Under the pieces are notes generated by a model, which ran no database searches, was not told the DNA's origin, and worked only from the letters and a program-made list of their open reading frames with translations. Of a stretch of 64,000 bases of DNA, positions 6,703 through 50,688 are shown one piece after another (the first letter of the stretch is position 1; each line of letters opens with the position of its first letter). This DNA is from Paraphysomonas bandaiensis (lineage: Eukaryota > Protista > Chrysophyceae): contig CBFFRP010000363.1 of the NCBI GenBank assembly GCA_965644295.1, positions 558,001 to 622,000 of the forward strand, in the 5' to 3' direction. The translations under genes and the position numbers were made by a program.

Positions 6703-7147
6703 GGATGTGAGTGAGGCTGTCAATCAACACTCTGATCCTTCGCTGGAAGAACCTCCTTACTGCAAGTACAAATACAGCAGTGCATCAGTACATCAGTACA
6801 TCAGTATATCAGTACATCAGTTTTTACAACAGTACAACTACTCCAGTTCGCTGTACCCCGCTGTACCACTGTACCACTCTGTACCTATACATAGCAGACT
6901 GCAGCAGTACATCACAATATTCCAAAAAAAGTGCACCCAAGCGCTCCAATAGAGTGGAGTGCAGTGGTTGTACTGGAGTATACCGTACTCTATAGTGCTG
7001 TACACAGGTACACGCTGTTGTATGATATGTGTGCAGTGTGCTATAGGCATTAGGCTGTTGGATAGAAGAGATAGAGGGCTGTACAGACAATCCCTTCGCC
7101 TCCTTGTGTCTCTTATCATTGAAAGAGTCAAAAGACCAGACTGCTCC

Positions 7148-8752
7148 ATGCGGATGAGTGTGAGAGTGGTGATGATGATGGCGTGTATGAGTGTGATGTC
7201 CTCTCGAGAACCGCTCGCAGGCCCCCACACAGACAGAGACAGAAGCAGAGACTCTGAGCCGAATCCCATGAGTCAACAACTGCCTGATTGCCGTCAGTCG
7301 TATGAGAGGGTGGTAAAGAAGACCCCTAAGAGGGCTATGGCGTGTCCGATGTTTCGTGATGAGGAGGGCTTCCTCGCTGAGTGGATAGCATACCATCAGA
7401 TGCACGGCTTCGACCACATCATACTGTTTGATCACGGCAGCACAGACAACTACAGGGAGGAGGTCCAGCCGTGGATTGACTCAGGTGAGTGTGCTGGTTC
7501 ATCGTATGGTTGTGAGGCTTGATATTATGAAAAAGGGTTTGCAACTGTCATAACGAGTTCGAATTGGAGTTATGTACTTGGAGACACCCCTACCCCTGTA
7601 CCAGCTGGAGACGGGCGCAGACTCAGTGCATTCAAGAAAATGATGTATCTCAAAGTATGATCTCATAACCTTTCAGAGTATATATGTAGTCGTAATGCGT
7701 CGCGTCATCCCCTGTGGGTGTAGGTGAGGCTGGAGAACTATTGCAAAGCTGAGGCAGTCAGAATGGGGTATGACTTCTTTGTATCGCTTGATTTAGACGA
7801 GTACTTGGTGCCGCTTAGTAGTGATTTAACTGCAGTAGATGAACTCGAGAAATTCTTTACCTCCACTCAACGGAATATACTCCCCTTGAAAAAGTTCAAC
7901 TACCAGTCTACACCGCACTTACTAGAACCTGTAAATCTACTCACTATTGAAGCCTACCATGTATGTGTCTGTTGCTTCAAAATCGAAGTATATATTTCTC
8001 TATTTCTTTACCTAAATGATGTGTCTGAAGAATCGAATGAGCCGTCCAAATGCTATGACTTACTTCAAGTCGGTGTCAGACAAGGTGGCCTTCAATTTGA
8101 AAGGAGCTAATTTCACTGACAACACTCAAAAGTTTATTGCAGAGTAAGATCCATTTTGCTGCCTTTGTTTTGTGACTTGTCACAGGTGCTGTAATTTCCA
8201 TGGATGTCCACACAAACCACGGAACGGCTTCTGTGGCGCCAACGCTCAGGAGCTACACAAGATATTTCGGCGGGGTGGACCCTGGTACGAAGGTGTCGTT
8301 ATCAATCACTACGGGCGTAGCCTTGAAAAGTATGGGCTAAAGGCGAAGACGTGGGAAACAGCCACTGGAGAAGACGCTAAGGGGTATAATGTAGAGAACT
8401 TTTTGGACAGAAATGTGGGTAGGCATCTCGATAGGAGAGCGCTAAAGTACGGATGCCAGCTGCGAGAGATTCTGGCGACATATGGTGCGTACATGAAAAG
8501 GAAGTTCTTTACATTTCCGTCTGTTATATGTTGATTGTGTGTAACATGGAGATGCCAGGCTTTAGGCCATTTCTTAGACCCGGAGATAGGTGGATGAGGA
8601 ACGTAGAGTTTGGTCGTCCGATGGTTGACCCTCACAAGGGTAAACGGCTTGGTGTCCCCATAGAGCCTGGGTTTTCAGTGAAGCAAAACTTCAAGGATCA
8701 CTATTTCGGATACTACACTAGTTTACAGGAGTATAAGTTGTCAAAGTCATAG
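7148..8752 (+). CDS. Glycosyltransferase of GT92/DUF23 or GT2-like type, multi-exon; start approximate
   Basis: MFRDEEGFLAEWIAYHQMHGFDHIILFDHGSTDN and the DLDEY DxD motif; hydrophobic N-terminus; exons linked by GT-AG introns. Confidence 0.75.
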
Positions 8753-21272: not shown

Positions 21273-24200
21273 CTACTCGACAATACTAATTCCAGCGGTG
21301 GATATGACTCTCTTGATCTGAAATTATCACGTGTAGCGTTATAAAATTCACATTAAACGAAATATTACCCACCTCTTCATCCAACTCTACCCAAGATTCC
21401 TTAAAAAGCGTGCCGTTGATAACCCTGCAGCAGCCATTAGCATATTATAACTAACTACGATACTGTTCACACCTGCGAGCCATGTCTAACTTTGGTTCTT
21501 TATGTAATGGATTGTTGCATAGGTCAATTGTCTTTGCCTAAACAAAAAAGACAAGCGTAAAATAATAGAACTAGAACTAATGTATCAATCTCATTCGTGT
21601 ACAGCAGTACTATAAAAGCGTACCTTCTTTTTAGACTTCTCTGAGCACCACGTCTCGCACCACAGCCATTCCTGTGGCAAAGAGTGAATGGGTACCACAT
21701 GCTGGGCGTAGTTAGGTAGGTCTTGGTCAAGATTTGCCAGACTGTTAGGGTCCTTGGCGAGAGAGTCGTAGACAGCGCGGAGCTTATCGCCGATAGCCTG
21801 TTGACGAAACACCTGGAGATCTACAACATAGAGTGCGCTAATATGGTATGGTTTGCCCCGCAGGTGATCCGCCCTAAACTCCACACATTGCACATTAGAC
21901 ATGAACAACTGATGATAGGTATTGATATCCATATATTTGAACTTGATTACACATGGTATAGTCAGTCACATCAAGAAACGAAAAAAAAGAACATCAATAC
22001 ACGGTCCCAGAAAAAATAATACTAACATACCAGTATCCCTGTCTCCAGAATTGGAAACCTAAAGTCTCTTGTCTCGAGTCGCAGAAAGGGGTATACGCAT
22101 AGGGCTTGCCTTGAAGATCCATATTCCACAATTCTTTCAGGTCTGATCGCACTACCTGGTCGGCATCCACGTAAATGACCTTCTTCACATCAAGAGGAAA
22201 TAGCACATCTAAGAAAAGGATTTTATATCCCCAAATAATGCGTTGCTTCTCTGTCTGTTGCGTGAGCCATTCCGGCCACTTGTAAGTGACATACCCCACA
22301 GTAAACCCATACTCTTTGCACATTGCGTCCACAGTCTGCTTAAACGAAGGAGAGAGGTAGTATTCGAACAGCCAAAACTTCACAGGTGCGCTGGTGCGCT
22401 TGACAACAGAGAGCATCATAATACGGAGGAGACGCTCGTACACCTGTCCCGTTGCCAGAGAAAATACATGAATGGTGCTGTCATCGTCTCCAGAGGTTGT
22501 AACGGCAGCGGATTTCTTTCCAAATATTCCGGAGAACGAGTCCCACATACCTCCAGACTTAGCTTGCGGCTCATCACTCTCGGCGTCATCTAATAATGAC
22601 ATATGCTCCATGCCAGGCTTTTTAGAAACATACAAATGCATCACTGAGTCCGCAAATGAGCGTACAGCTATAGATACACCAAATTCAGAGACAGCTCCAC
22701 TACTGCCATCGATAGTGTAGAGTGCAGCGGCCCGTCCATCGGCAAGGTTCAGCGCAAACAGTCCAGGGTTGGCGTGTAGTTGGAAATAACCAAGATTTTG
22801 CATCACCAGCGTATCAGAAAACTTCGTAACACCATTCTCTCCGCGTGTATTGAGGACTAGTTGCAGGCCATTTGGTGGGGTGGGGTTGGTGTTAATGTTC
22901 TCAAAACACTGGCCGGCGATCAAAAGGTTCTTAATTTTATAAGATACTGCGGTATTTTCACTTCCTGTGATATCACCACACATCCTACTGTCACACTTTA
23001 AGTTGTCAATATCCTGAACAGCACGATATGATTGCACATTCCACGCCTCTGGTGAATCGATGCGAACAGTAAGGGTGTGTTGCTTTGGTAGGTTCTTGAA
23101 CTGGGCAGTAGGAGATGTTGGATTAGACACAAATCGGAAGAAATTTTGCAAAGGAAACTCGGTTATTTCCATTTCTGGAGATAGAATAACAATTTGAGGC
23201 AGCCTGAGTTGGTTTTGAATAAACTGAATCAGAGTCGCTGCCCGCTGTCCGGCCCTGGAAAGAGGATCAAATACAAACACCAGAGAGACATCAGAGTCAC
23301 TGCTATTTTCATCGCTGTCACTAACTTCAGACAGAATGCTCTGAGCTGCTGAAGAGATATCTGCCAGCGGTGGGATCGAAAGCATGTGAGACGGTAAATC
23401 GTCCAAATCGTAACCTCCCGACTCTTTGATAATTTCGAGAACATCCATTCTGCTATATCCTGATGACGTAGCATATCTACCGCAGAAGCCACTCAGTGCA
23501 AGATATTGCTCACCGGTGTAAGGTAATTTAACATCTTCGTTGGTAATGTATTCGTTAGCACGTAAAAGGGCTGCTAGTTTTGCTCCCATTCTTGTTTCCT
23601 CAACACCGGCCAGAAGTGGCAAATCAAGCTCATGTAGTGGACTTTGATCAGACGGCACCACCAAGACACGAGCATTGTACACAATAATGGAATTGTCAGA
23701 ATTCGCACTATCACCCAACGCAGCTAGTGATTCAAATGACGCACTAATGATAGATAACTTTCGTAATATTTCTTTCGTTTCCGCAGAAGAAGTCAGTAGC
23801 TCACCACTGTCACTCAATATTGTACTCACAACTCTTGACACAGAGGGGTTCTTGGGAAATGACAGCTCCATCGCCCGGACACAATCCTCCACGGGATCAG
23901 CGACAATGAATTTTTCAAGCAATAGCTTAAAAGCGCGAGCATCCTGCAGGGTTTGCATTTGCGATGAGGATAAGAATGCGGCCAGAACTGCAAGCATATC
24001 ACTCGAGCTAGTACTTGGTGATGCAGGCAACGTTGGAATAAAGGAAACGCGGTGAGAATACATAAAACTCGAATCTGCAGCGCAGGTTGCATCGCCATCA
24101 GAGGCTTCCTGAATATTCGACAGCAGCCATTCCAATACCGCAACCGCTGACCGCATTCCGTGTACAGTCACAGGAAACCGAACTAACGTAGTGTTGTATA

Positions 24201-26670
24201 TCCCACCATCATGTACCTCTCCACAGACACCAGCATCAACTCCGCCACCATTGTGGAAAAATGGCGTGTCACGAATTAATTTCGAAAACTCAGGTAACGT
24301 GGTATCCATGTAATCAGGAGTTACCTCATCAACCAGAGCGTGAAACCGGGGATATGTGACAGAATTCTCAAGTATAGCATTATATATTGACTTTGTTTTG
24401 TCCGTAATTTTTCCCTTGCGTACCATCTGAGAGAGAATATACTGCTCGCGCCCTAGAAGCTGCATAATTCCGCTTGAAATGTCATATGACGGCCGTACAA
24501 TCCCGTTTAGGGCATACGAGTTGGCTGGTAGTCCTCTATGAGTGCAGTACTGTGTCGAGTTTGCAACAAAATCCGACTGAAGCCTCTTCGATAAAATATC
24601 CTTCGCGTCCTGTGAGTATTTATCCTTCTGAGTCCAGCTCTTTTGTACCTGCGAGACCACGCTAGTATAAATATCAATTGCCTGATCCACAGACAGCAAC
24701 CGGGCTTGTAACGCATCAGGTGATGTGGCAATTGCTGTTGGGTCAACTGCACTTCCGGTAGGAGAAAATAGATCCTCCGCCATTGTTTCTATGTGATTGG
24801 CTAAGGTTGTGAGGAACTTCACTCCCGCATGAGGTCCATACATTTCTTTTATATGAGAGAAGAGCCGACACGCATCTTCACTTCCCGCACTACCATCTGT
24901 TCCCGCAGCAGTATTTTGACAAGCCAGTGCGATACCAATACGTATAGGATACTGCTGTTGATACATTCCCTGCAGTTGAGAGATCATAGATGCTCCAGCG
25001 GCAGATACTGGATCCACCACAGCAACTAGAGTGTAGAGGTTCCGTTGTACGGCATGAAGATTCCAGGCCGGTTGCAGCAGCTGTTTAACTGTTTTTGGCA
25101 ACCGCTTGTACTGTGGGTCTTTCTCTAGGTTATTTAGAAAGGAAATGACATGTTTCCCTCCTTTACTCACATCCACACGAGTAATAGGTGGCATGCCACC
25201 GCGTGTCCGCTGTCCAGAGAGGCCTGCAGCAATACTCAGGAGTTCTCTCTTCACATCACTGTCCACACCCTGGGAGTGTAGGTATCCCAGAGATTTTATC
25301 TCTCGTTGAATGTGTCCGATGAGACTGAAAAGGTTGAAGGTCGAGCCCGCAAGATCCAATCGTATCCCATTTACGAACAAGCTATTCGATGGAATGAGTC
25401 CGGCGACGTTACCATACCACCGCTGCAGCTCTTTCTGTAGAGCAGGTCTAACTCGAGAAGATGACAACGAAGAAGCATGTTTCGGGAAGTTGAGCAGGAT
25501 GTCATTCATGCTGCGCACAGGGTCGGAAGACGAGGTTATAGCGTAGGCAGTCTGAAGACCAAGGTCTAGCATCTTCCACATCTGCATACAAATTCAGCAT
25601 ATTCGCAAAAAAATCGCTCATGCCCATTATGTAATAATTTTAAAACAGAATGTATTCCTTACGTATTCAATGCAATACTGAAAACGGATAGGCACGCGCG
25701 TGGTTGTATTTACCTTCATTTCTGTGCCTCCTTCGTCACTGTTTATTAGTTGTTCACGTAGTATACCGAGCTCTTGAGATAGCTGTGGTTTGCGCTCGTG
25801 CAGCGTTGAGAAAACCAGTCCTGCAACCTCCTCGCCTTCTTCAAAGTTCACCTCACCCGCTCCTTTATCCGCCAGAGAGGCAGCTTCTTCACTGCTGGAA
25901 CTGTCGTCAACATTGCGGTACTCCATGTTCTTTATGTCCAGGTAGACTCCGTAGCCCTGAATACTACGATGGGTAGATATAACGGGCACCCCTGGAAAGG
26001 CTGGCCGGTATATGTAGCGTACAGTCCGTGCCTTGGCAAGCGGCTGAAGGGCAGAATGCAACCCACAGAATGAAGTAGTGCCAGCTATACCATGCAAAAC
26101 ATACACAGGGGCCGAAGATTCTGACACAGTGCCAGTAGTATACTCATAATCCCAAGACGCGAAATGTCCATCATCCTGCTCCAAAGATTCCTCCACAGGG
26201 GTTATACGGGATGGAACACTACAGAGAATATTTCCACCAGGATAGGATACAATATAAGCATTCCCGTGTCCACAAGGAGCGCCATGCCCCTCAGAGATTG
26301 TAGCGAAGAACTGAGTCACAGGGGCAAACATACCAATGCTGTTAGACGCCGACATAATCGCATGCATATTAGCAGGCAAAACATCTGTGGCAATTGATTT
26401 GACTAATTCAGTTATATCGGCTATAAGTGACTCGTTATGAGAGAGCAGCGCCGCTTCAATAACAGATGAACGATCAGCATCACATGAAGCATCCGCATAC
26501 AGCCAGAATACATCTCTGTCGTACTGGTTCAAGAATTCCCCCATCTCAACCACTGGATCCGTCGTGTGGACACTCCATGGGGCCTGTAGATCGACCTGTA
26601 CAGTCCTGCTGCTCACACAGGCAGCTAGTGCCGTTAATAAACACACAGCAAGAGAGAGACTAACACGCAT
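21273..26670 (-). CDS. UGGT: UDP-glucose:glycoprotein glucosyltransferase (GT24)
   Basis: Signal peptide; [97 protein letters not shown]. Confidence 0.96.
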
Positions 26671-34311: not shown

Positions 34312-36583
34312 TCAATCTATAGATGCAGGAAAAACATGTATGCGATGGTTATCTGTATTAGACACAAACAGCATGCCATCGGCACAACAAACACCTCGGG
34401 GGTTAAGAAACTGATCTCCACCTTGCCCATGTGAGCCGATGGTCCTCACAAATGTACCATCGAAACGAAACACTTCAATACAGTGACTATTGCAGTCGGA
34501 CACATACAGGAATCCTTCGGAACAGCAGATGTCATATGGGCTCAGGCTGTGACGGAATATAGATCGTACGAAAGAACCGTCCCCACAGAACACTTGTACG
34601 CGATGATTGTTCTGGTCTGCGACGAAGAGTAGTTCCCCATTGCTGCAAGCACCTCTAGGATACGAGAGTTTAGTGGGCCCTGATCCCTTTGAGCAGAAAG
34701 TCCTCATCGCTGTTCCGTTGAACTGGAAGGATTGTATGCGGTGGTTATCATCATCGACACAGTATAGAAGGCCATTCAACGCGCACAGACCATGGGGATA
34801 AGAGAACTTACCAGTATCCCTTCCTTTTGACCCTATGCACTTGATAAGGTTGCCCTCAATGTCAAAAGCCTGTACACGATGATTGTCCGAAACGAATATG
34901 ATTCCATCTGCCACGCATATGCCTCTTGGAAAGTTGAACTGGCCAGCTCTCGTTCCGTGAGAGCCGATATGTCGAACATAGGTTCCGTCTGGACGTAGTA
35001 CTTGCACGCGGTGATTGTCATTGTCTGCTACATATAGCAAACCGTCGTAAAAACACAACCCATAGGGACTAGAGACCTGGCCAGGCCCCGATCCATGGGT
35101 GGCAATCACGCATGGTTCAAGAGTGCACTCGACAGAAAGAGGACTCTGAGCAATCGGCTGCCCATCGATTGTAATATGCAAACAATACCGACCTGGTTCA
35201 TTCAATGTGTAACTCAGTCGATACTGGCCCCCGCCTTGTTCTGTAATACTGATAGGAAATCCTTCCACTTCATCTTGGTTGCAGAGAGTGCAATTGATAC
35301 TTAACAAACTGCACTGAAAAGACTGACCTTGGGAACTACGCGTGACCAGGGTGAGGTTGTATTGCGCTCCCACATGGCTCCTGTAGGGGCCGGACTCTAT
35401 CACTGAGCACTGGGCAGGGTCCAAATCTATCACTGACCCGATAACACGCAGGGAAGCTTGTAGGTCAGCAGGCGGAAAGAAAGAAATTTTGCTCGATGGA
35501 ATATCCGTTGTCATAGCGTCTACATCGCTCAGAAGTTTGTGGATATCGCTCATCATCTGCCATTCATTCTCAATCACCCATAACGTCGACTTTGTAGCCA
35601 AAGACTGCTCTATACTGCCAACTACTGACGCCGTCTTCGCGGAGTAGACCGAAAGATGTTCCATGCGGTCAACTAAAGCATTCGCCTTCAACTCACCGAT
35701 ACGCCGCACCTCATCTTTCAAAGCCATCTCACGAGTATGCAAAATATCCCGCAACGTATCAAAATACTGTTCAATCTCCAGCATCGAAGCTTGAAGGATT
35801 CCTCCGGTTTGAGTTGCGCCGGAGCAATAAACCTCACCTCCAGTGAGAGCTTGGTAGGTGTCTGCAAGGCTTTTAGTGGATGATTTAACGGCTTCTGTAC
35901 GGGCCCGCAGCTTCGTCAGGCTCTCCTGTAATCGCCCCACCGCCAAAACGGACTCGTCAGATATCAGGCCAATGTCGTGTCCTTTATGAGAACTAAAGCT
36001 GCAGAGAGTGCAAATGGCCACCCTGTGTTGCTTGCAGAACGCAAGGCACTCTTGTCCATGTTCTGGGCACACCCTGTTGATACAGTCTGCGTTCCACTCA
36101 ATGTGTCGGTGGGAATCTGTAGGTGGTTTACGGTGGCGGATAGCGTAACACTCCTCACATAGAGAACGGAGTTTCGGGCAATCCCGACAGAAAACTTGGG
36201 CAGTTTCTGACTCACATATTTCACACATCGGGGTTTGAGTGGCTGCTGGATTCGGTGGTGGAGGTGGAGGGGGAGGTAGAGAGGGGTCAAATATGGAGGA
36301 GTTGTTGGATGCGTTCTTCCGCCACACTCTCATGCAGCGGATGACCTCCTGATTGTTCTTCGAACCGGAGAATACACACCCGCACTCGGGACAGGTCGAG
36401 GACGGGAATCGTGGCAGACATTGCAAGCTATGAGTCTGTTAGAGGCGATACAGCACAGCAGAGCAGGTGTTACCAGTAGGTGTGGCCGCAGGGAAGACAC
36501 CGGGGCAGACGATCGACCTCGTCATACTCCACCATACAGATGGAGCAGCTGAAGACGCTATCTTCATCGCTACAGCTCTCCAT
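34312..36583 (-). CDS. TRIM-NHL-like E3 ligase: RING, two B-boxes, coiled coil, filamin/Ig, NHL repeats (2 exons)
   Basis: Exon 1 MESCSDEDSVFSCSICMVEY...LPCGHTYC spliced to LQCL...CPEC completes the RING; CEIC..C..C..H and CPEH..FCKQH..CTLC..H B-boxes; YTLNEPGRY..I.IDGQPIAQSP filamin; repeated F..P.G.C...LYVAD..NHRVQV. Confidence 0.9.
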
Positions 36584-41109: not shown

Positions 41110-44100
41110 CTAAACATCTGACTTCGGTTGGCATGTCGTGAGCTCAATCGCTGATATTTGTGTGTCTGTGTCAACAACAGCATTATTTCGAACGCAAACT
41201 GCGTCGATGCGACCATGCAGTCCTGTGCTGCTCATTTCACCTTTCGTAACATATTCATACTCTTCTTCACTTGAATATTCGTCATCACTATCTTTCTCTC
41301 TGCGATCAATACGGAACTCACGATCAGGGGCTTTTCCTGGCTGTAATGATTGCGTGGAGCGTTGTGAATTTTTAGCGCTATCGGATTCTTTCTCACTCAC
41401 CAAAACACACCACGAGAAGTATAGCTGGAGAACCAGTACACTCATATTTACGACGATTAGGCTCCATCCAACAGCACTGATCATGTCATGACGCACCAAC
41501 TCATACTCAACAACTAGAGCCCCCAAAAATGTGAACATAATCTGGTATTGACCAGTTTCCCCCATGATAGAGTCTACATCTTCTGTGTAGGGCGAACAAT
41601 AGTTGTAAAGCTTCAAGTATCCTAAGGCAAGTAAAATAGAGAGCACAGCTTGTTCTGATGACCCAGGAGCACAAACACTTAATATAGCGGTTAGTACAAG
41701 ACGACGAGTAGTTTCAATGATTTCGAAATACCAACATTGCGGACGATAGGCTTTCCACAAAAACGATAGTCGCTGAACTTCGGCACTTAATATTGGTCGT
41801 TTTGAAACATCCTCTACAGGTCCCTGCTGCAAAGTCGATGTTTGCATTGGATTCGCAGTTTCTACAGCCGTATCAATAGGTGTGATAATTTTTGTAGTAT
41901 CTCTGGACTGTATCTCATCATTATGAATATACAAGAGCGCAAAGTACAAGCACGGTATGCCCACAGGGTATACCAAAATCATAACCGAAGCATATATGAC
42001 ACCGCCATAGTAGAGACCACTATCACACGATATGCTCATATCCGCAGTTAGAAACACATCCGAACTATTATCGTCCTCATCATTCGGGTCAACATTTGTA
42101 CACAAAAACATTTTAAATATAGTTGTCGTGGCAGAAGGAAGTACTAAATAGGTTAAGTAGAAAAATAGATTCAGGTATTTCTCTTTGGCCAAATTGAACG
42201 CTCGCCTTTTGTCGCCCTTTTTCCTGTTTTTGTTCGACTGTATTTGACGTCGTATCCACATATATTCCACAATAAAACAAAGCCATAGAAGACTGCATAG
42301 TGCAATTGGAGTAAGGGTTGTAATTACGAGGGTATCTATGAAAGAAAACGATGCAGCACAGCTCAGTGGAAGAATTCCCATGATATCCAGGTTAACAAAG
42401 TCCAATGCATTCAAAAATCGATTAAAATTGGATGGAAAGTCAATGGCAAGTACAGTTCCGGCTTCAGTAATTATCTGATATGTCGCTACAGCGATTTTAA
42501 TTCGGCCCATCAACTTCGAGACAGACTTTTGCATACTACTCCAGCAATTGTCATCTGATGTCTCATCGGAACTCGCACGGGGTTGGTCTGATCTACTTGC
42601 ACCACTGACATCTCTAGCTTGTGTTGCTGTCCTGGACTTCAATTTCTGGGTTCTACGACGGAAAAAAATACTAGCCGCAGCTAATCCGAAAGCAATAACG
42701 ACAATCAAAATAAACACAAGCGTCTGTGGAGTTAATAGTGCCACACCTTCACATTTCACGCACTCGTCGTTAGACAAAAAGTATCCGCTCGAGCACACTG
42801 CACACAGTACACCTTCACAGCCTCCTGCACAAAGATCATTGCCTGTTGAGTTGCCACCTCTACAGCTGGACTGCAAGGGACACTCCTGCACCGTAGAATG
42901 CGAGGGATATCGGCGCCAGTACCCCTCTTTCACAACTATCTGAGATGCGAAACAGTCTTCTATACCATCGTGAGAGAGGCACTCAGTGCACTCATCGTAT
43001 GCAACCAGATTATACTGGCCTTTTGGACAAACAACACACTCACCCTCGGACAAGTATTCACCTGCTACACATTCCCTCAATCGGAGAGTAGTTGCCGTGG
43101 AGATGTAATACGGAGCACCAATGTTCTCAGGTATCCCTAATAAATTTCCCAGATGGGCTTCAAATCTAACGGTGAGGTTACCACCAGGAGTGCATCGTAC
43201 TCGCAATGAGTCAAAAAAGGCCATTCCTTCGACGACAGGGACTCCACTTCCGACAACATCTGTACCCTCTAAAAGGGGAATTCCCTCACCACATTGCTCA
43301 CTCCCATCTGCGATAGTAGCCACAACTGAAGTGTCATCATCTACCAGCACAGTTTGGTTGTAGTAGTCTAGCAAATGGTACTCCAGTGCAGGAGTCAAGT
43401 CTTGGTCATATACATTCACCATATAAGTTGTAGGACCGACAAGTGTACAAGCCTGGGTCGCACTACGATTCCCATATTTAGCACTATTTCCTACCCATAG
43501 AACAGAAGGGTTATTAAGTCCCGGGGGTTCTGTTGTCATGTCCGAATCCGCAAGCCAATACACAGTGCCTCCCACTGATGCATAATTACTGTCAAATACA
43601 ATAGAATTTAGCTCTTTCTTATTTCCATCAATCGTAAAGCTCTGGTAGTTTTTCAGAGCCTTAAAGAACAATCCAGATCCTCTGGATGCAGTGTTTCTTA
43701 AAATACGGAGTGAGCTATTTGGTTGAACTTCCCATACTTCACTTTCGATGCTCGCTATCGCACCACCAAATATTTCAGCAGAATTACCCATGAGCACGTT
43801 GTCTCCTTCAAATGTTAGTTTAGTTTCTGAGAGGATCATCAACCCACCACCAGTGGTCATCGCGGAATTGGAAGACACATTCGTGCGCGCCAGTTGCATT
43901 TCGTTGGAGCGCGAAACTTGTATACCACCACCCCTGTCGGCATGATTACCATGCACTAGACAGTCACTCATAAGAACAGAGTTGAATTCATCCAATAGTA
44001 CTCCCCCACCATATCCCGCGGCAGTGTTGTCATTAACTTCGGATAAAGAAATATTAACTTTATTGCTGCTCTCAACCGCTATCCCGGCACCCGTGACCGC

Positions 44101-47100
44101 AAGGTTGTTTACAATACTACACCCTGATACAAGTATCTCGCTGAGTAGTGGGAAATCATTGATGCCATTTTCAGATGATATGAGAACACCACCACCTATT
44201 CCTCCAGCCGTGTTGTTCCGAACAATACAGTTTAGTATAGAGACAGCAATATGAGCCATTCCAATGACTAAACCGCCACCATTCGCAAGAGCTCTATTAC
44301 CCTCCACAACCACCTGATCAGTAGGGCGATTAGGAAAAACACCATTATATGACCACAACAGTTTCGTTTAGTATACGTGCAGTGTAATAAATCTAAAAGT
44401 CATACGTTGATAATATCAGAAGGCAGACAACGGACCTGCTGTAAAGTAGTTCCCGTATTGGTACTTCGTAGATAGACTCCCCCTCCAGGACCACTCAAAG
44501 CCGTGTTGTTTCTAATGTGCGTGTTCACTATAATTCCAAACCTGCTATCACGATTTAGCATAATCCCTGCCCCTGTGAACACATCAACAATGTGCAGATG
44601 AAGTACAATGAGACTATACGTAAATGTGTTCGCGTTATACCTGAGTACCCAACGTTCTCTTCTATAACCGTACGTTTAGTAGGATACGACTCCGGAAACA
44701 CTGGAGTGATAGTAAATGTCGCCTCTATCCGGCTATCTGAGTAGTAAACAGCCACAGATGTAGAAGGAATATGCAATGCAGGATAGTTTATCCCTGGGAT
44801 ATTTGCATCATTGACAATAAAGTACAGCTCATTGTTAGCAATAAAGTATATGCTCTCGCTTGATTTCAATGTTACATCCGCATCAAATAAAACAATGAGC
44901 TCTGTTGAGCCATTTACCTCACCGGGTTCAAAATATATATCATCTCCATTCGTGTGCGTGACAACCACTGATTGATAGAACGCTTCACTGTCCGAAATAA
45001 GTAATTGCGAGCTGGAAGACGCGAAATAAAGTCCAGCACCCCAAGATGATGCCCGGTTTTCTTTAATATCACACCCTGCGATCACTGGACGGACAAGAGT
45101 GAAGGCGGTCAATGCACCACCGTAGCTGGCATAGTTTCCGTCAAAGAGGCACTCCACAATGTGGGAGTCCAAGTTGCCATCATACAAACAAACCCCACCA
45201 CCAGAGTACGCTGAGTTAGAGTAAAACTCACAGAACTTGATAGTTGTGTCCGCACCAGAAAGCCCTACAAATAAAGCGCCACCAACCACATCAGCCGTGC
45301 AGTCAACAAAAGTACAGTTCTCGATAAGCAATGACTCAGTATCGGTCCCACACGCCACACCACCCCCACCAGAAGCTGCAGAACATCGAGATAAGTATGA
45401 CCCTGCAACCACCCCACCAGCAACATTGTCAGCGAAGTAGATTCCTCCTCCAAAGTCACCCGCAGAGCAATTGTATATTTGACAGTCCATTATTTTTGGA
45501 GAGGCACTACTCGCCCCAATGTAAACAGCCCCCCCACTCGAAATCTCAGAGATACAAGAATCAAATATTGTGTTCACGATCGAGACCTCGTCTTGATCAT
45601 TTCCAATATACACTCCTCCACCTTCTGAATATGCAGTGCAACGAATGAAAGTGGAGTCAGATATACGAACACCGAGACTCCCTGAGGAAATATGCACACA
45701 GCCGCCTTGCCCAGAAGCATGGCAGTCGCTCATTGTCACGTTTAACAAAGACATCCCATCGTTATCAGCCTGGAAACCCACACATCCTCCATAGGATGAT
45801 ATACCCTCCCCTTCACATGACGTAAACACTGTATTCGAAATGACCATATGCCTGTTGTCATACCCCACGGATAGGCACCCATTGGACATGCCTGCTATCC
45901 CACGATACAAATACGAGTTGTCAATGGTAACATTGTGGTTCGACTGGTATACATACAACATCCCCCCCTTTCCACCTGCATCACATGATCTAAAAAACGT
46001 GCCTGAAATATAGAGTATGTTTCGTGTGCTTACGTAAATGGCTCCCCCATCCTGTCCTGAAGAACAGGACTCAAAATTCACATTATGTACAACAATATCA
46101 TTCTCTTCGTACACAAATACAGCTCCGCCATACTGACCGCATTCACAACGAAAAAATGATGACGTCATAAAAGCGATAGTGCTGTTTAGCATAACCATTA
46201 CGGCACCTCCAGAATCACCAGCTTCACAGCCAAAGAACACACTGTCACTGAAGGTAACATTAGCAACATTGTTGTCTACATATACTCCTCCACCGTCATA
46301 CGTAGCTTGGTTAGTATCGAAGACACAATAGTCACACCTCACTGTCTCTGTATTGTCAGTCAAGTATAGTGCACCCCCTCTATCAGCAAGGTTTGAATCA
46401 AATACTACATGAGAGAGATTCAAAGCACAGTTGCCGTCAAAATATAGAGCACCTCCAAAAGGCGCTTCAAACCCCCGCAAAGTCATATTCGACAACTCTA
46501 ATCGTGGCACAGAAATTAATTCAGAGGAAGATATGCTATGTTCTTCCGTATATGAGTAAGCTATAAATCGCAGATAAGGTTCCGCAACGGCTGTCTCAGA
46601 ATATGCGCCCACAATAGCCGAGCACGAAGTTGATGAGTAACAACCTACACGAAGACAAAGCTCTGAACAACCCTCCGTTGACACGCCGTATACTATCTCC
46701 GATACAACCCCACAGTAGTCATCATTGAACGCCACTTCAGTACCATTCTCGAACAATGAAAATACTGTATCTCCACTGGCAGAGGTTTGTGTATCTCCCG
46801 ACTGGTCACACGAAGTGAATTTAAATACCTCCCCATAGCAGCCTGTTAAGCATGCTTCAGCGTAATTAGTAGTTCCAAAGTCTGTGTCATCTAACACCCC
46901 TGTATCAAGCGGAAACTCCCCTCTAACTGGTTGTGAAGATAAACTTACAAAGCCTTCCCTTGTAACAACAGCACCATTCCCTGTGACAACGATATTGCAG
47001 TGGGGCTCAAGAGTGAGGTCGCCATACTCCGCGCTAAGCGATATATTCTCACTAACGGGAAGTCTTATAGTGCACTCGCCGGTCCCACACGCTTCCAGAC

Positions 47101-47254
47101 ACGACTCCCAGGCGGAGCGCAGGTTGCAGTGACCTGTGTTCGGGGAGCAGAGAGAGGAGTCTGGAGGGGAGTCCACAGAACTATCAACTATGAACTCCAC
47201 TGCACCACACACCACTAATGCTAAAGCTATCGACCAAACACGCAACATATGCAT
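41110..47254 (-). CDS. Large cell-surface protein: polymorphic-membrane-protein-like beta-helix repeats, Cys-rich GCC2/GCC3-like region, C-terminal multi-TM domain (exons about 47254-44641, 44572-44436, 44313-41110)
   Basis: Signal peptide; CNLRSA; many GGA(I/V)Y and FxxN repeats; C..CPKGQY; GYWR; LCAVCSSGY; LSFLWKAYRPQCWYFEIIETTRRLVLT TM module. Confidence 0.85.
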
Positions 47255-47554
47255 CAGGGACTCACAGCGAATCTCAGTACTTTAACATCACATGTACTGC
47301 TCACCTCTCTATAACTGCACTGTATCTACACGGTATCTATCTTACGGTACATTATCACAGCACACAGCACCAGAGAGCAGTGCATCGTATCATCCATATG
47401 GTGATGGGATGATTTCTTATGAACTGAGCGGATTATTCCATAGGCATTCCATCGCCCATACACTCCTGCAGTATATATAATACTACTACAGTGATTGAAT
47501 TTTATACATATCTACTACGTATTTTACGGCCTGTTCCGTAAAAGTCTGGCACTC

Positions 47555-47565
47555 CAGCCGAGTGG
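47555..47565 (+). promoter_or_regulatory. A-box-like Pol III element in the leader of the permuted tRNA
   Basis: CAGCCGAGTGG versus consensus TRGCNNAGYGG (one mismatch), 31 nt upstream of B box GGTTCGAATCC at 47597-47607. Confidence 0.6.
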
Positions 47566-47582
47566 GCAGATCAGTGGGAGTG

Positions 47583-47662
47583 AGCTGAAGATTCCGGGTT
47601 CGAATCCCGGGTAGGGTTTTCGTGTGCCCTGCTGGCCCAATGGATACGGCGTCAGCCTCCTA
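47583..47662 (+). tRNA. trnR-CCU: Circularly permuted tRNA-Arg(CCU): 3' half 47583-47618, linker 47619-47625, 5' half 47626-47662
   Basis: Rejoined halves give a full cloverleaf: acceptor GCCCUGC/GUAGGGU, D arm GCC..AAUGGAUA..GGC with A20, anticodon stem UCAGC/GCUGA with loop CU-CCU-AA, T arm CCGGG-UUCGAAU-CCCGG; flanks form a BHB motif at 37/38. Confidence 0.9.
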
Positions 47663-47670
47663 TCTAGCTA

Positions 47671-47679
47671 TTTTTTTTT
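47671..47679 (+). terminator. RNA polymerase III terminator (T9)
   Basis: Oligo-T run 8 nt after the end of the tRNA 5' half. Confidence 0.8.
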
Positions 47680-49079
47680 GCACTCTTTGCGTATACTGCT
47701 GTATACACTGATGCCTACCACAGTGATACTGCCTCTTGTTAAAGGGGAGTGTCTGAAGGTATACAGTACCATGCGAGGATAGAACTCTTTTCTTTTGGTG
47801 TCACTGTTAGGGCATCCCTTACAGATTAAGTGACATTAGTAACAGGCGGCGATTTTTGAAGCCACTTATTTCATCTCCTCCCTGAGTTGAAACTGTTCAT
47901 CAGAGTGAACTTCAGAGTCCATATTGCCAATGACAAAGTCTAGTTCAACAGACTTACGGTCGCGTAATTGATACCAAACTATAGAGTTGCTGTTTTTAAG
48001 TAAAGGTACCAGCAGTATGAAAGTATGAAACAGTTGATGAAACGTATAGCAATGAATGTTACTGAAGTGTCACTGAATCTTCAAAAGCCAGTTTTCTGGT
48101 GACATTTTGAGGTACAAAAACGCTGTCAGCAACATCTCACTGAAAATAGTACTGAAAAAATGTTACTAAGTCTATTAGTAATACCCTTATGTGGCTGCAA
48201 CATGACTGGACACATTGTAAACACGAGAGATTCACGAGTCTAACAAACACTGACCACCCATCTTTGAATGTTCTGAAAATGTGTGTATCCAGTATGAACA
48301 AAAAAGAGTAAGCAGATGTCAGGTTTATTGATATCCTGCTCATTCATGCCTTTGCTGTTGCATGATCGGTCCAAATATAAGTTCGCCACATTCATTTTTT
48401 GTATTCGATGACCAATGAGATGTCTTTAACCTTCGTTCTGGATATGTGGTAAAGACAGGGTGATCTGGTCTATTTTGTTTTAAGGAGTGCCCCTCATCAA
48501 GTGGCTGAAGAAATGTTTACTCAGAATTAGGAAGTCTAAAAATGTTGCCAATGGAGTTGTTTCACACATCTGGTTCTAGGCTTATGTTGTTTTCGTGGTC
48601 CTAGAAATGAATTGTGTGGAACAGCCTATTCGTTTTCTACATCGCTATATATATCAGTGTTTACATTTATCATTGACAAAAAGAATGAATTTGTTCCACG
48701 AACAAAAACCCTTCTTAGCAAAGAGAGCAGAGCTCCGTAAACCCACATCTACCCTTCTTTTGACCTGATGAGCAGAAGAGATTGTTTTTCTAGATAAAAA
48801 TCAATTTGATGTCTACATACTGTAATTTTCATATTAAAGGGAGGAATCTGCACTCTAGTACCGAAGTGTTTAGGATAATTCGATTAAAAGTGTTCAAGGT
48901 AGATTCATATATTACGTATTATCTGTCTGAATAATTCTTGTTTTAAAGAAATTGTCAAGTAGTTCAGTAGTATAATGTATAATGATTGCCATAATTCAAT
49001 TTACAGTACTGTAAGCTGTAAGTAGATTAATAAGATATAAGATACGTATCTTTGTTGATCGCGGAAGTACTAAAATAAG

Positions 49080-50688
49080 ATAAGGTTTTTTTGCGGCCCG
49101 CCAGGGCCCTCGGCCCTCTAAAATTAATTTTTTTCAGTTTTTGCCTCCTGAAGATTTTGATTTGTTATATTATTTCAGTTATTGTCTTTTAAAGATTTCG
49201 AGTTTTGAAAAAAGAAATGTGATTGGTTTTTAATTTCGACTTTTTGAAAACTTAATACAAATTCATTAATAATTTTGTCATCAAGCAGGCGATTAATAAT
49301 GCATGATTCTAATTCAGAAGAATCAGGGAGAAAAGATAGTTGTAATAGCGATGATCTCCCTACAACTTTTCAGTGGGAAGGTTTCAGATACACTATCAAG
49401 CAGAGGAAGAGGCTTCAAGATGGTTCGGTATAATATATTCTCTATCAGTAAGCCACTGATCCATATATTTAGGAAATTTGAAGGGTTATTATCGGTGCTC
49501 AAAACACCGGAAAGGAAGAACATGTGGCTGTCCAGCTAAATTGACAATTCTTGTTCACGAGGAAGCAGAAGAATCTGATGAAAAACTGATAATTTCAAAG
49601 GGGAAAGAGGAGCACAAATGTGGTGCCACCACCTTTATATTGCCTTCAGATTCACCAACATCTGATGATAATTCCAAGGAGAGGTCGTCGTTTTGTAAAG
49701 GTGTATATGACGCAAGTGGTGAAATGAAACAACTTTGTGAAGCAATGGCGTTGAAAGATGTTTCGAAGTCCTCCATTGCGATTGCAAATGAAGATGCGGA
49801 AACAACGCGAGCGAAATATAAGCAGCTCGGTGAGAGAATTGATATTTTTTTTCTTTTTGCTGTTTTCACTTCATTTTCTTTTGCTTATTTCGGTAGGAAT
49901 GCCATATAGATATCTCGAAACGTCGAAACTCAAAGCTTTGGTGTATCAGTGTAGACGTTTAGAGTTCAATGATTGGGAAGGAATTATATCGTCGTATCCG
50001 CTTGTGAACTGTGCTGATGACAAGAATACGTCGAACTTCGAAACAAAATTCTCAGGGGTCATGCATCCCGGCCGAAACATCTGCCATTCCAGCAATTCAC
50101 ATTGCCAGAGGACTACGCTGCATTTGAAATGGACAGGTCAGTCCAAAGGACTAAGTTTGCGCAGCTCAACCAATACAAGTTTTTGATTGGGAAGAGCCAC
50201 TATGATCCTGAGGATGGGTGCATGTACGAGGTGGTGAGAGTTGGATTTTACGAGGGGTCCATCGTTGGCTATCGCGAGCAGTGCAAACTGCAGAATGGAT
50301 ATGTTGTCGATGTACCCACTGATGATTGTATTTCAATTGAGGAGATAGTGAAATACACTGGATGTGGCAAGGAGTCTACAGTGACAGCCGAAGACTGTGC
50401 TTTCACCGAGGAGATTGAGACATGCTGTATTGCCGCCGGCAGGGCTCAGACCGGCGCCAAACGCCGGTATAGGGCCGGTGGGGCCGGCTCCGAAAAATGT
50501 TTTGGTATAAAGTTGCTCTTGCTTAAGATATTAATAACTCTTGCTAAATTTGACCCTTTGCTTTGTGCGTTATTGTTGCTTGTGGTTGTAGTGTGTGTTG
50601 TGTGTGTTTTTAATTAAGAATTATTGTTATTATTGTTAGTTGTAGTAGAGGGCCAAATGCGGGCCGAGGGCCAAAATTAAATTTTTCC
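49080..50688 (+). mobile_element. Decayed Mutator-like (MULE) DNA transposon
   Basis: Inverted subterminal motifs (ggccctcggccc/gggccgagggcc, ggccctcta/tagagggcc); 9-bp direct repeat TAAAATAAG at 49071-49079 and 50689-50697; internal YYRCSKHRKGRTCGCPAKL...EHKC WRKY/FLYWCH-like zinc finger; no DDE core seen. Confidence 0.6.

What the first reader, a model, noticed from the sequence alone, without database searches (positions are those of the whole stretch)
47576..47679. Circularly permuted tRNA-Arg(CCU) gene with a BHB splice motif in an apparent stramenopile
Seen in sequence: the 3' half (A38-U73, 47583-47618) precedes the 5' half (G1-A37, 47626-47662), with linker TTCGTGT and a T9 terminator. 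All four arms pair, and the Arg identity base A20 is present. Leader GGAG (47577-47580) pairs with C32-U33-C34-C35 (47657-47660). This 4-bp helix is flanked by two 3-nt bulges, UG^A (47581-83) and UA^U (47661-63), closed by G47576-C47664. That is bulge-helix-bulge geometry, and its cut sites fall exactly at 37/38; the outer helix is only 1 bp. Established: permuted tRNAs in Cyanidioschyzon merolae, Ostreococcus/Micromonas, chlorarachniophytes and Thermofilum mature via splicing-endonuclease cleavage, ligation to a circle, then tRNase Z/RNase P removal of the linker. Inference: this lineage has the same circular-intermediate pathway, which I do not know to be described in stramenopiles. AGG codons are used in genes of this window.
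Basis: partly seen in the sequence, partly recalled or inferred. Interest (0 to 1): 0.95.

Follow-up and report, generated by a model that had tools for sequence, protein, structure and literature searches.

The report
Permuted tRNA-Arg gene in a chrysophyte
A nuclear tRNA-Arg(CCU) gene of the colourless marine chrysophyte Paraphysomonas is written back to front (3' half, 7-base spacer, 5' half), an arrangement reported so far only from red and green algae, nucleomorphs and one archaeon; it is probably made usable by cutting, circularising and re-opening the RNA, though no RNA data could be obtained to show this.

Summary
Window 47583-47618 is tRNA positions 38-73, 47619-47625 is a 7-nt linker, and 47626-47662 is positions 1-37. 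Joined 5'+3' they give a 73-nt tRNA-Arg(CCU) that ARAGORN calls. The native DNA is invisible to ARAGORN and Rfam.

A second permuted copy on another contig has both halves identical (73/73). Its linker (ACTTGT), one bulge base and its flanks differ. That points to selection on the halves, not misassembly. Both copies have a T-run like this genome's ordinary tRNA genes, and copy 2 also has their upstream TATA-like motif.

The minimal precursor's MFE fold is the permuted cloverleaf. It includes a leader helix UGGGAG:CUCCUA and a 3-nt bulge that puts the 3' cut at 37/38. The genome's own tRNA-Tyr intron has the same C32:G(-3) pair and bulge size. The second bulge of a strict BHB is not favoured, so this is a relaxed hBH, as in green-algal type II genes.

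The genome is Paraphysomonas, a heterotrophic chrysophyte (stramenopile). No conventional tRNA-Arg(CCU) and no other permuted tRNA was found. No RNA evidence was obtainable, because only poly(A)-type contigs exist. The literature I could search reports no stramenopile case. The scan's notes showed no such gene on other DNA.

Verdict: new member of a known kind.

The parts
47471..47512 (+). AT-rich upstream region with TATA-like motifs (GTATATATAATAC 47471-47483; GAATTTTATACATATC 47497-47512). Putative upstream Pol III promoter element.
   Evidence: Ordinary nuclear tRNA genes of this genome (Tyr, Asn, Ile, Lys, Cys, Arg-UCU) carry TTTATAT(T)ATA-type motifs about 25-50 nt upstream. Copy 2 has the same TTTATATTATATAATTTT as the tRNA-Tyr genes. 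AATTTTATA aligns between the two copies. Function is inferred.
47543..47582 (+). 5' leader; its start is uncertain. The conserved block U47575-GGGAG-U47581 pairs with anticodon-loop C32-A37. U47581-G47582 plus A38 form the 3-nt bulge holding the 3' cut site.
   Evidence: UGGGAGU is identical in both copies, while the base next to the cut differs (G vs A) and the sequence upstream diverges. The MFE fold shows the helix and bulge. Weak similarity between the two leaders begins at GTCTGG/GTCTTG (47543), borderline at p about 0.05.
47583..47618 (+). 3' half of tRNA-Arg(CCU): A38, anticodon-stem 3' strand, variable loop AGAUU, T arm, acceptor 3' strand, discriminator U73.
   Evidence: 36/36 identical in copy 2.
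47619..47625 (+). Intervening sequence (linker) TTCGTGT, which closes the acceptor stem as a loop. To be removed by RNase P and tRNase Z.
   Evidence: Copy 2 has ACTTGT, one base shorter. Unpaired in the MFE fold. Within the known range of 1-74 nt (PMC3978253). Caveat: with U72-U73 it makes a T4 run in copy 1.
47626..47662 (+). 5' half of tRNA-Arg(CCU): acceptor 5' strand, D arm (loop AAUGGAUA), anticodon-stem 5' strand, C32 U33 C34 C35 U36 A37.
   Evidence: 37/37 identical in copy 2.
47663..47670 (+). 3' trailer TCTAGCTA. The 5' cut site lies between A37 (47662) and U47663.
   Evidence: UCU is shared by both copies; the rest diverges. The position of the cut is inferred from the tRNA numbering.
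47671..47679 (+). T9 run, Pol III terminator.
   Evidence: Copy 2 has T7. Ordinary tRNA genes here mostly end in T5-T13 runs within a few nt.

Best explanation
This is a functional, circularly permuted nuclear gene for tRNA-Arg(CCU), type II with the junction at 37/38. The organism is the heterotrophic chrysophyte Paraphysomonas. It is one of two such loci and, as far as I could search, the only kind of gene for this anticodon in the assembly.

Proposed mechanism:
1. RNA polymerase III, directed by an upstream TATA-like element, transcribes leader, 3' half, 6-7-nt linker, 5' half and trailer as one RNA, and stops at the T-run.
2. The RNA folds into a tRNA body whose acceptor stem is closed by the linker.
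3. The anticodon stem is extended by a helix between the leader (UGGGAG) and the anticodon loop (CUCCUA). A 3-nt bulge (U-G/A-A38) sits between them. This relaxed hBH is the substrate type of eukaryotic tRNA splicing endonuclease.
4. The endonuclease cuts after A37 and before A38, releasing the leader and trailer.
5. A tRNA ligase joins A37 to A38, giving a circle.
6. RNase P and tRNase Z cut out the linker, and CCA is added.

Shown here: the gene anatomy, its conservation, the fold, the promoter/terminator context, and the presence of intron-containing tRNA-Tyr genes and an endonuclease catalytic domain.

Inferred: transcription, the cuts, the circle, aminoacylation.
For: - The joined halves give a complete tRNA-Arg(cct). 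Only this locus does so among 18,264 rotated tiles, and 0 of 2,000 shuffles do.
- The second locus, G000:C357:223715-223816(-), has both halves 73/73 identical. The linker lying between them differs (TTCGTGT vs ACTTGT) and the flanks are unalignable. Recent duplication or gene conversion would have carried the linker along, so the halves look to be under purifying selection.
- Within the leader-to-trailer segment proximal to the gene, every difference between the copies falls at a position unpaired in the fold: the bulge base, the linker loop and the distal trailer.
- The MFE of the 100-nt precursor is the permuted cloverleaf plus leader helix plus 3-nt bulge, in both copies.
- The same C32:G(-3) pair and 3-nt bulge occur in the 17-nt intron of this genome's tRNA-Tyr(GUA) genes.
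- A tRNA-intron endonuclease catalytic domain is encoded at C51:16424-16609, 30.2 bits.
- Copy 2 has the same upstream TATA-like motif as ordinary tRNA genes, copy 1 has AT-rich TATA-like motifs, and both end in a T-run.
- An independent DNA run of a roughly 1%-divergent strain or allele reproduces each half joined to its own flank. Its indels are in the flanks, and none lies in 47532-47684.
- A pattern for a conventional tRNA-Arg(CCU) found no tRNA. Sister patterns recovered Thr(UGU), Tyr(GUA) and Arg(UCU).
- BLAST of the locus finds only the two permuted copies.
- AGG is 12% of Arg codons.
- The architecture equals the type II genes of Ostreococcus/Micromonas (PMC3978253).
Against: - There is no RNA evidence. 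The three RNA-type runs are poly(A)-like contigs that stop at 47365-47405 and resume at 47818-47838. That neither supports nor refutes expression of a small Pol III RNA.
- The strict BHB is not the favoured fold, and the 5' cut site sits at the end of a helix rather than in a bulge.
- Copy 1 has a T4 run (U72-U73 plus the first two linker bases) that could terminate some Pol III transcripts early.
- No orthologue from another species was found, so conservation rests on two paralogues and one near-identical strain.
- The fold's z-score against shuffles is modest, -1.41; I take this as usual for tRNAs, from general knowledge.
- The tRNA inventory is incomplete. Only 63 of 2,525 candidates were scored, so a divergent conventional tRNA-Arg(CCU), or one with an intron over 30 nt, could have been missed.
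- From general knowledge, tRNA-Arg(UCU) may read AGG by wobble, so the gene need not be essential.
Confidence: 0.78

Rival explanations
1. A functional permuted gene that matures without a circular intermediate. RNase P and tRNase Z remove the linker first. The two halves stay base-paired like a split tRNA, and the endonuclease and ligase then join A37 to A38.
For: The anatomy does not fix the order of steps. Split tRNAs of Nanoarchaeum are joined in this way (cited in PMC3978253).
Against: Where it was examined (C. merolae, green algae), the circular intermediate retaining the intervening sequence was detected (PMC3978253). Nothing here argues for another order.
Confidence: 0.1
2. A non-functional relic: the remains of two neighbouring tRNA genes after a deletion or rearrangement (3' half of one, 5' half of the next), or a pseudogene pair.
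For: Ordinary tRNA genes here often lie in close tandem pairs. No RNA evidence exists. Copy 1's leader resembles the 5' half of tRNA-Arg(UCU) marginally (p = 0.036, uncorrected).
Against: The two loci keep 73/73 identity in the halves while the linker between them and all flanks have diverged. The leader block complementary to the anticodon loop is conserved. Copy 2 keeps the ordinary tRNA promoter motif and both keep a terminator. No other gene for this anticodon was found.
Confidence: 0.05
3. A transcribed tRNA-like non-coding RNA that is not used in translation, such as a Y-RNA-like or regulatory RNA or a tRNA-derived repeat. It would function in its permuted, linear form.
For: Weak Rfam match to YrlA, whose alignment here has the same T arm, acceptor-like stem, D arm order (19.4 bits, E = 0.2, far below the gathering score of 69).
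Against: After joining, the anticodon loop is a perfect 7-nt loop with U33, CCU and A37, and the mature sequence passes a tRNA detector. There are only two copies, so it is not a repeat family. From general knowledge, YrlA is a bacterial family. The leader/trailer geometry fits splicing at exactly 37/38.
Confidence: 0.04
4. An assembly artefact that swapped the two halves of an ordinary gene.
For: Short identical repeats (the two copies) break de Bruijn graphs. The independent DNA contigs stop at 47612 and restart at 47636.
Against: Those break points are exactly 30 nt past the last copy-specific base on either side (47582 and 47666), as expected for k = 31 with two true copies. Each half is contiguous with its own unique flank in the independent run. 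The same order is found at two loci with different linkers.
Confidence: 0.02

Closest known systems
Type II (37/38) permuted tRNA genes of the prasinophytes Ostreococcus and Micromonas, e.g. O. tauri tRNA-Arg(UCU) with an 11-bp intervening sequence (Maruyama et al. 2010, as tabulated in PMC3978253)
   Same: - Order 3' half, short intervening sequence, 5' half.
- Junction at 37/38.
- Relaxed hBH at the junction, the form recognised by eukaryotic splicing endonuclease.
- AT-rich upstream region and a T-run downstream.
- No CCA encoded.
   Different: - The host is a colourless stramenopile, not a green alga.
- Only one isoacceptor (two copies) is permuted, against 3-6 per prasinophyte genome.
- The linker is shorter (6-7 nt against 11-64).
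- Expression is not shown here.
Cyanidioschyzon merolae permuted tRNA genes, including tRNA-Arg(CCU) (Soma et al. 2007; PMC3978253)
   Same: - Same anticodon among the permuted set.
- Upstream TATA-like element.
- A 7-nt intervening sequence occurs there too (Gly-CCC).
- Maturation via a circular RNA was shown experimentally there and is the model used here.
   Different: - C. merolae Arg(CCU) is type IV (junction 59/60) with an extra intron at 14/15.
- C. merolae has junctions at many positions and ectopic introns.
- Here the only junction found is the canonical 37/38, and the one intron family examined (tRNA-Tyr) is canonical.
Nucleomorph tRNA-Ser genes of Bigelowiella natans and other chlorarachniophytes (PMC3978253; PMC4494063)
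   Same: Type II junction, hBH, and very short intervening sequence (5 nt).
   Different: Those lie in a reduced green-algal relict nucleus. This one lies in the host nucleus of an organism whose plastid ancestry is red-algal, by established phylogeny.
Thermofilum pendens permuted tRNA-iMet and tRNA-Tyr (Chan et al. 2011, PMC3218864)
   Same: Permuted order, and a BHB-type junction processed by a splicing endonuclease.
   Different: Archaeal, with the junction at 59/60, CCA encoded, and additional introns.
Canonical 37/38 tRNA introns, e.g. this genome's own tRNA-Tyr(GUA) with a 17-nt intron
   Same: Same cut positions. Same C32:G(-3) anticodon-intron pair, and a 3-nt bulge containing the 3' cut.
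   Different: In the permuted gene the 'intron' is open: its two ends are the leader and the trailer. Ligation therefore circularises the RNA instead of joining two exons of a linear one.

Membership tests
Circularly permuted tRNA gene, type II (junction 37/38) | [quoted passage not shown] | tested here: met
   47583-47618 / 47619-47625 / 47626-47662. Same order at C357 with a 6-nt linker.
Circularly permuted tRNA gene, type II (junction 37/38) | The joined halves form a complete cloverleaf with the conserved eukaryotic tRNA nucleotides. | tested here: met
   ARAGORN calls tRNA-Arg(cct), 73 nt. U8, A14, R15:Y48, G18G19, U33, A37 and U54U55C56 are read in the sequence. One C13/C22 mismatch gives a 3-bp D stem.
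Circularly permuted tRNA gene, type II (junction 37/38) | Leader and trailer form a BHB-type motif (at least the relaxed hBH) that places both cuts at the junction. | tested here: met
   In the MFE of both copies: anticodon stem, then the 3-nt bulge U-G/A-A38, then a 6-7-bp leader:anticodon-loop helix. The cuts fall at 37/38.
Strict archaeal-type bulge-helix-bulge (hBHBh') | Two 3-nt bulges separated by exactly 4 bp and flanked by two outer helices. | tested here: not met
   The second bulge needs G47576 and U47575 left unpaired from U36 and A37, and an outer helix of 1 bp (copy 1). That conformer is 5-7 kcal/mol less stable than the MFE. Copy 2 could add G-C and A-U after a U.U mismatch.
Circularly permuted tRNA gene, type II (junction 37/38) | A single transcription unit: promoter upstream of the 3' half, terminator after the 5' half, none in between. 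| tested here: inconclusive
   TATA-like motifs upstream and T9/T7 downstream, as in ordinary tRNA genes here. Copy 2's linker has no T-run. Copy 1 has a T4 at the 3' half/linker border. Transcription itself is not observed.
Circularly permuted tRNA gene, type II (junction 37/38) | Expression: a circular intermediate retaining the intervening sequence, and a mature aminoacylated tRNA. | not testable with these tools
   Only Logan contigs of poly(A)-type RNA runs are available, and none covers 47406-47817.
Circularly permuted tRNA gene, type II (junction 37/38) | The host has the tRNA splicing machinery. | tested here: met
   At least 3 tRNA-Tyr(GUA) gene copies with a 17-nt intron at 37/38. 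PF01974 catalytic domain at C51:16424-16609, 30.2 bits against a cut-off of 27. The ligase was not searched for.

The most novel reading that the evidence does not exclude
The two permuted loci are the only source of tRNA-Arg(CCU) in a plastid-reduced, phagotrophic stramenopile. The cut-circularise-reopen pathway is then in routine use outside the red and green algal lineages. It arose there independently from an ordinary gene, using nothing but the standard eukaryotic 37/38 splicing machinery. That would imply that permuted tRNA genes are scattered across eukaryotes and are systematically missed by tRNAscan-type annotation.
Probability: 0.55. Interest if true: 0.72.

Novelty: new member of a known kind. 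Interest (0 to 1): 0.66.

Why it matters
- Distribution. Permuted tRNA genes have been taken as a curiosity of early-branching red and green algae, green-derived nucleomorphs and one crenarchaeon. Reviews up to 2026 still list only those (PMC13578239, PMC3978253), plus Auxenochlorella in 2025. A case in the host nucleus of a heterotrophic chrysophyte extends the phenomenon to the SAR supergroup.
- Origin. The case argues for repeated, recent origin from ordinary genes rather than an archaeal or algal heirloom. It also shows that the canonical eukaryotic 37/38 endonuclease system is sufficient.
- Annotation. Standard annotation reports this genome as lacking tRNA-Arg(CCU).
- Testability. Paraphysomonas is culturable, so the prediction (junction reads, a circle with a 6-7-nt linker) can be tested directly.

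Tried and rejected
1. RNA evidence. This is uninformative for a Pol III RNA.

2. Orthologues. A metagenome scan for T arm, 16-45 nt, then Arg D arm returned only three copies of an ordinary tandem tRNA cluster. A viral-contig scan returned nothing. The neighbouring 899-aa ORF has no relative above 28% identity, so synteny could not be used.

3. Other permuted tRNAs. B-box-then-A-box patterns, strict and relaxed, gave no more hits than the reversed-pattern control. Read by eye, only the two Arg(CCU) loci have complementary acceptor strands. Junctions outside the A-B interval (types I, III, IV, V) were not searched.

4. ARAGORN in intron mode on rotated candidates is insensitive. It found copy 1 at a single cut point and missed copy 2.

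5. There is no similarity of either leader to the gene's own 5' half (p about 0.7). Only a marginal match links copy 1's leader to the tRNA-Arg(UCU) 5' half (p = 0.036, four tests). Not supported.

6. 'Surrogate A box in the leader' (s1-436783). By eye, CAGCCGAGTGG in copy 1 fits about 10/11 of the A-box consensus as I recall it, but copy 2 has CAGCCGGGATG (about 7/11). It is not conserved. The upstream TATA-like element is the better candidate promoter.

7. Taxon. The SSU rRNA search failed twice. The Atlas search was uninformative.

8. Leader-trailer pairing in tRNA-Tyr is not better than shuffles, 174/1000.

Full report
**1. The observation**

- 47583-47618: AGCTGAAGATTCCGGGTTCGAATCCCGGGTAGGGTT
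- 47619-47625: TTCGTGT
- 47626-47662: GCCCTGCTGGCCCAATGGATACGGCGTCAGCCTCCTA
- then the trailer TCTAGCTA and nine T (47671-47679)

ARAGORN finds no tRNA anywhere in the native window. Rfam finds nothing at gathering thresholds.

When the second block is placed before the first, ARAGORN calls a 73-nt tRNA-Arg(cct) with all four arms.

As a control I rotated every 80-nt tile of the window, on both strands at step 7, in the same way. That made 18,264 tiles. Only tiles lying over this locus gave a tRNA call. None of 2,000 shuffles of the joined sequence did.

At permissive thresholds the only Rfam match spanning the locus is YrlA (19.4 bits, E = 0.2). Its alignment runs T arm, acceptor-like stem, D arm, the same order as here. 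That is a reflection of the topology, not a family assignment.

**2. A second copy, and what it says**

BLAST of 47560-47680 against the whole assembly (62.6 Mb, 669 contigs) finds exactly two places: the window's own locus and C357:223715-223816 on the minus strand.

That second locus has the same permuted order.
- Both halves are identical, 36/36 and 37/37.
- The linker between them is ACTTGT instead of TTCGTGT.
- The base just 5' of A38 is A instead of G.
- The trailer shares only TCT, TA and the T-run.
- The flanks are otherwise unalignable, apart from an AT-rich upstream motif and a weakly similar leader.

The diverged linker sits between two perfectly conserved blocks. Recent duplication or gene conversion therefore cannot explain the identity. 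The halves appear to be under purifying selection. Within the leader-to-trailer segment proximal to the gene, all differences fall at positions that are unpaired in the proposed fold.

The same BLAST result also shows that no conventional gene of identical sequence exists elsewhere.

**3. Independent DNA, and RNA**

The one read-laying run used 5,901 letters, within the operators' limit.

Runs X1-X3 carry GT..AG joints at 49421/49472 and 49828/49896 that are absent from X13. They are therefore spliced transcript contigs. They end at 47365-47405 and resume at 47818-47838, so the tRNA lies in a gap between two mRNA units. Poly(A)-type contigs cannot speak to a Pol III small RNA.

X13 behaves as DNA of a strain or allele about 1% different.
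- Its contigs run from the upstream gene to 47612 and from 47636 downstream.
- Those break points are exactly 30 nt beyond the copy-specific bases 47582 and 47666. That is what 31-mer graphs give when two true copies share the halves.
- X13 has indels at 47471, 47473, 47531, 47685 and 47756, but none within 47532-47684.

Misassembly is therefore very unlikely. Expression remains unshown.

**4. Fold and junction**

The 100-nt precursor 47571-47670 folds, as its MFE, into the following. Copy 2 does the same.
- the T arm
- a 7-bp acceptor stem closed by the linker as a loop
- the D arm
- the anticodon stem
- a 3-nt bulge (U47581, G47582, A38)
- a helix between the leader and the anticodon loop

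G47580 pairs with C32. This is the anticodon-intron pair three bases before the 3' cut, which eukaryotic splicing endonuclease requires (PMC3978253).

It is disfavoured by about 5-7 kcal/mol, because U47575 and G47576 can pair with A37 and U36. UGGGAG is fully complementary to CUCCUA.

The motif is thus a relaxed hBH with the 5' cut at the end of the helix, not a strict hBHBh'. This is the form described for the type II permuted genes of green algae and the Bigelowiella nucleomorph.

The fold's z-score against shuffles is modest, -1.41; I take this as usual for tRNAs, from general knowledge.

**5. Context in the same genome**

Pattern searches built on the A box, anticodon loop and B box gave these results.
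- They recovered ordinary tRNA-Thr(UGU).
- They recovered at least three tRNA-Tyr(GUA) gene copies with a 17-nt intron at 37/38.
- They recovered four intron-less tRNA-Arg(UCU) genes.
- The same pattern with CCT returned three non-tRNA chance hits against two in the control.

The Tyr intron ends ...GGAU|A. G(-3) lies opposite C32 and there is a 3-nt bulge, the same local geometry as in the permuted gene.

One tRNA-intron endonuclease catalytic domain (PF01974, 30.2 bits) is encoded on C51.

Ordinary nuclear tRNA genes here have a TTTATAT(T)ATA-type motif roughly 25-50 nt upstream. Most end in a T5-T13 run within a few bases of the 3' end. Copy 2 of the permuted gene carries the very motif of the Tyr genes (TTTATATTATATAATTTT), about 63 nt before A38. 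Copy 1 has GAATTTTATACATATC and GTATATATAATAC. Both end in T7-T9. This suggests a start some 30-45 nt before A38; the leader's exact start is not known.

B-box-then-A-box patterns, strict and relaxed, found no further permuted gene. All ten distinct canonical nuclear tRNAs I had in hand satisfy those boxes. That sample is biased to high scorers, and junction types other than those between the boxes were not searched.

**6. Organism**

- The window's UGGT ORF (21994-25587, minus strand) is 100% identical to an MMETSP1103 protein labelled Paraphysomonas, taxid 36769: Chrysophyceae, Stramenopiles. The next-named relatives are ochrophytes and oomycetes.
- The genome encodes several silicon transporters and gave no light-harvesting-protein match. 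This fits a colourless, silica-scaled flagellate.
- Contig C669 is a 61.6-kb, 20-24% GC mitochondrial genome with nad7 and nad9.
- The organism's words occur in marine poly(A) metatranscriptomes.

**7. Comparison with what is known**

According to the 2014 review, 34 permuted genes were known (PMC3978253).
- C. merolae: 11 genes, types I-IV.
- Ostreococcus and Micromonas: 19 genes, nearly all type II.
- B. natans nucleomorph: 2 genes.
- Thermofilum pendens: 2 genes.

Later additions in the library are other chlorarachniophyte nucleomorphs (listed) and Auxenochlorella. A 2026 review of photosynthetic eukaryotes still names only red and green algae and nucleomorphs. PlantRNA 2.0, which annotated two heterokontophytes, reports none there.

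Searches combining 'permuted tRNA' with stramenopile, diatom or chrysophyte found no report. Subscription-only papers are not covered.

The present gene meets the structural definition of a type II permuted gene. It differs in host lineage, in being the only permuted isoacceptor found, and in its short linker (6-7 nt; known range 1-74).

**8. Verdict**

This is a real and almost certainly functional circularly permuted tRNA-Arg(CCU) gene. It is a new member of a known kind and, as far as the accessible literature shows, the first in a stramenopile.

The maturation pathway (endonuclease cuts at 37/38, ligation to a circle, removal of the linker by RNase P and tRNase Z, CCA addition) is inferred by analogy. 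It needs RNA data.

From general knowledge, tRNA-Arg(UCU) may read AGG by wobble, so essentiality is not assured.

Noticed in passing
window 49070-50687: A 1,618-bp stretch of the window is absent from contigs of two RNA-type runs and of the DNA run X13 (joint 49069 to 50688, ends CT..TC, not an intron). It is an insertion/deletion polymorphism between strains or haplotypes, possibly a mobile element. X13's depth inside it is 3-8 times that of the flanks.
   Followed up: no
G000:C669 (L033-L036; L035:4451-5677 and 6643-7740): The 61.6-kb, 20-24% GC mitochondrial contig has a cluster of 12 tRNA genes. It encodes nad7 and nad1 proteins that are identical to NCBI entries MBS42768.1 and MBS42771.1, labelled 'MAG: ... 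[Nocardioides sp.]'. A public bacterial MAG seems to contain a misbinned Paraphysomonas mitochondrial contig.
   Followed up: partly
L064:1584-1610, also L066, L068, L069: All tRNA-Tyr(GUA) gene copies share an unusually long, identical 25-nt 3' trailer (GACCATTAGGTGACGGGCCACTTCC) before the T-run. Leader-trailer pairing is not better than shuffles (174/1000), so its role is unexplained. tRNA-Phe genes likewise share a roughly 29-nt conserved 5' leader.
   Followed up: partly
window 47555-47565: By eye, CAGCCGAGTGG in copy 1's leader fits about 10 of 11 positions of the Pol III A-box consensus as I recall it, 41 nt before the B box. The corresponding stretch of copy 2 (CAGCCGGGATG) fits only about 7 of 11, so a conserved 'surrogate A box' is doubtful.
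   Followed up: partly
window 47617-47620: U72-U73 plus the first two linker bases make a T4 run in copy 1. Copy 2 has only TT. Terminators of ordinary tRNA genes here are mostly T5-T13, so T4 is probably read through, but it could cause partial early termination.
   Followed up: no
window 34312-36426 (-): ORF with a B-box zinc finger, a filamin repeat and NHL repeats. I recall this TRIM-NHL-like architecture mainly from animals, so it is unexpected in a chrysophyte.
   Followed up: no
G000:C348:104740-105963, C406, C398, C150, C298, C149, C405: At least seven loci encode silicon transporters (PF03842), most with two repeats of the half-domain in ORFs of 500-560 aa. No chlorophyll a/b-binding family match was found in the genome. 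This is consistent with a colourless silica-scaled flagellate.
   Followed up: no
window 44555-47254 (-) and 41110-44358 (-): Two adjacent large ORFs. One has a Pfam right-handed beta-helix domain. The other has only distant relatives that carry beta-helix and PMP-repeat domains, with the best relative at 28% identity, many of them bacterial or archaeal. They appear to be fast-evolving surface-protein-like genes next to the tRNA locus.
   Followed up: partly
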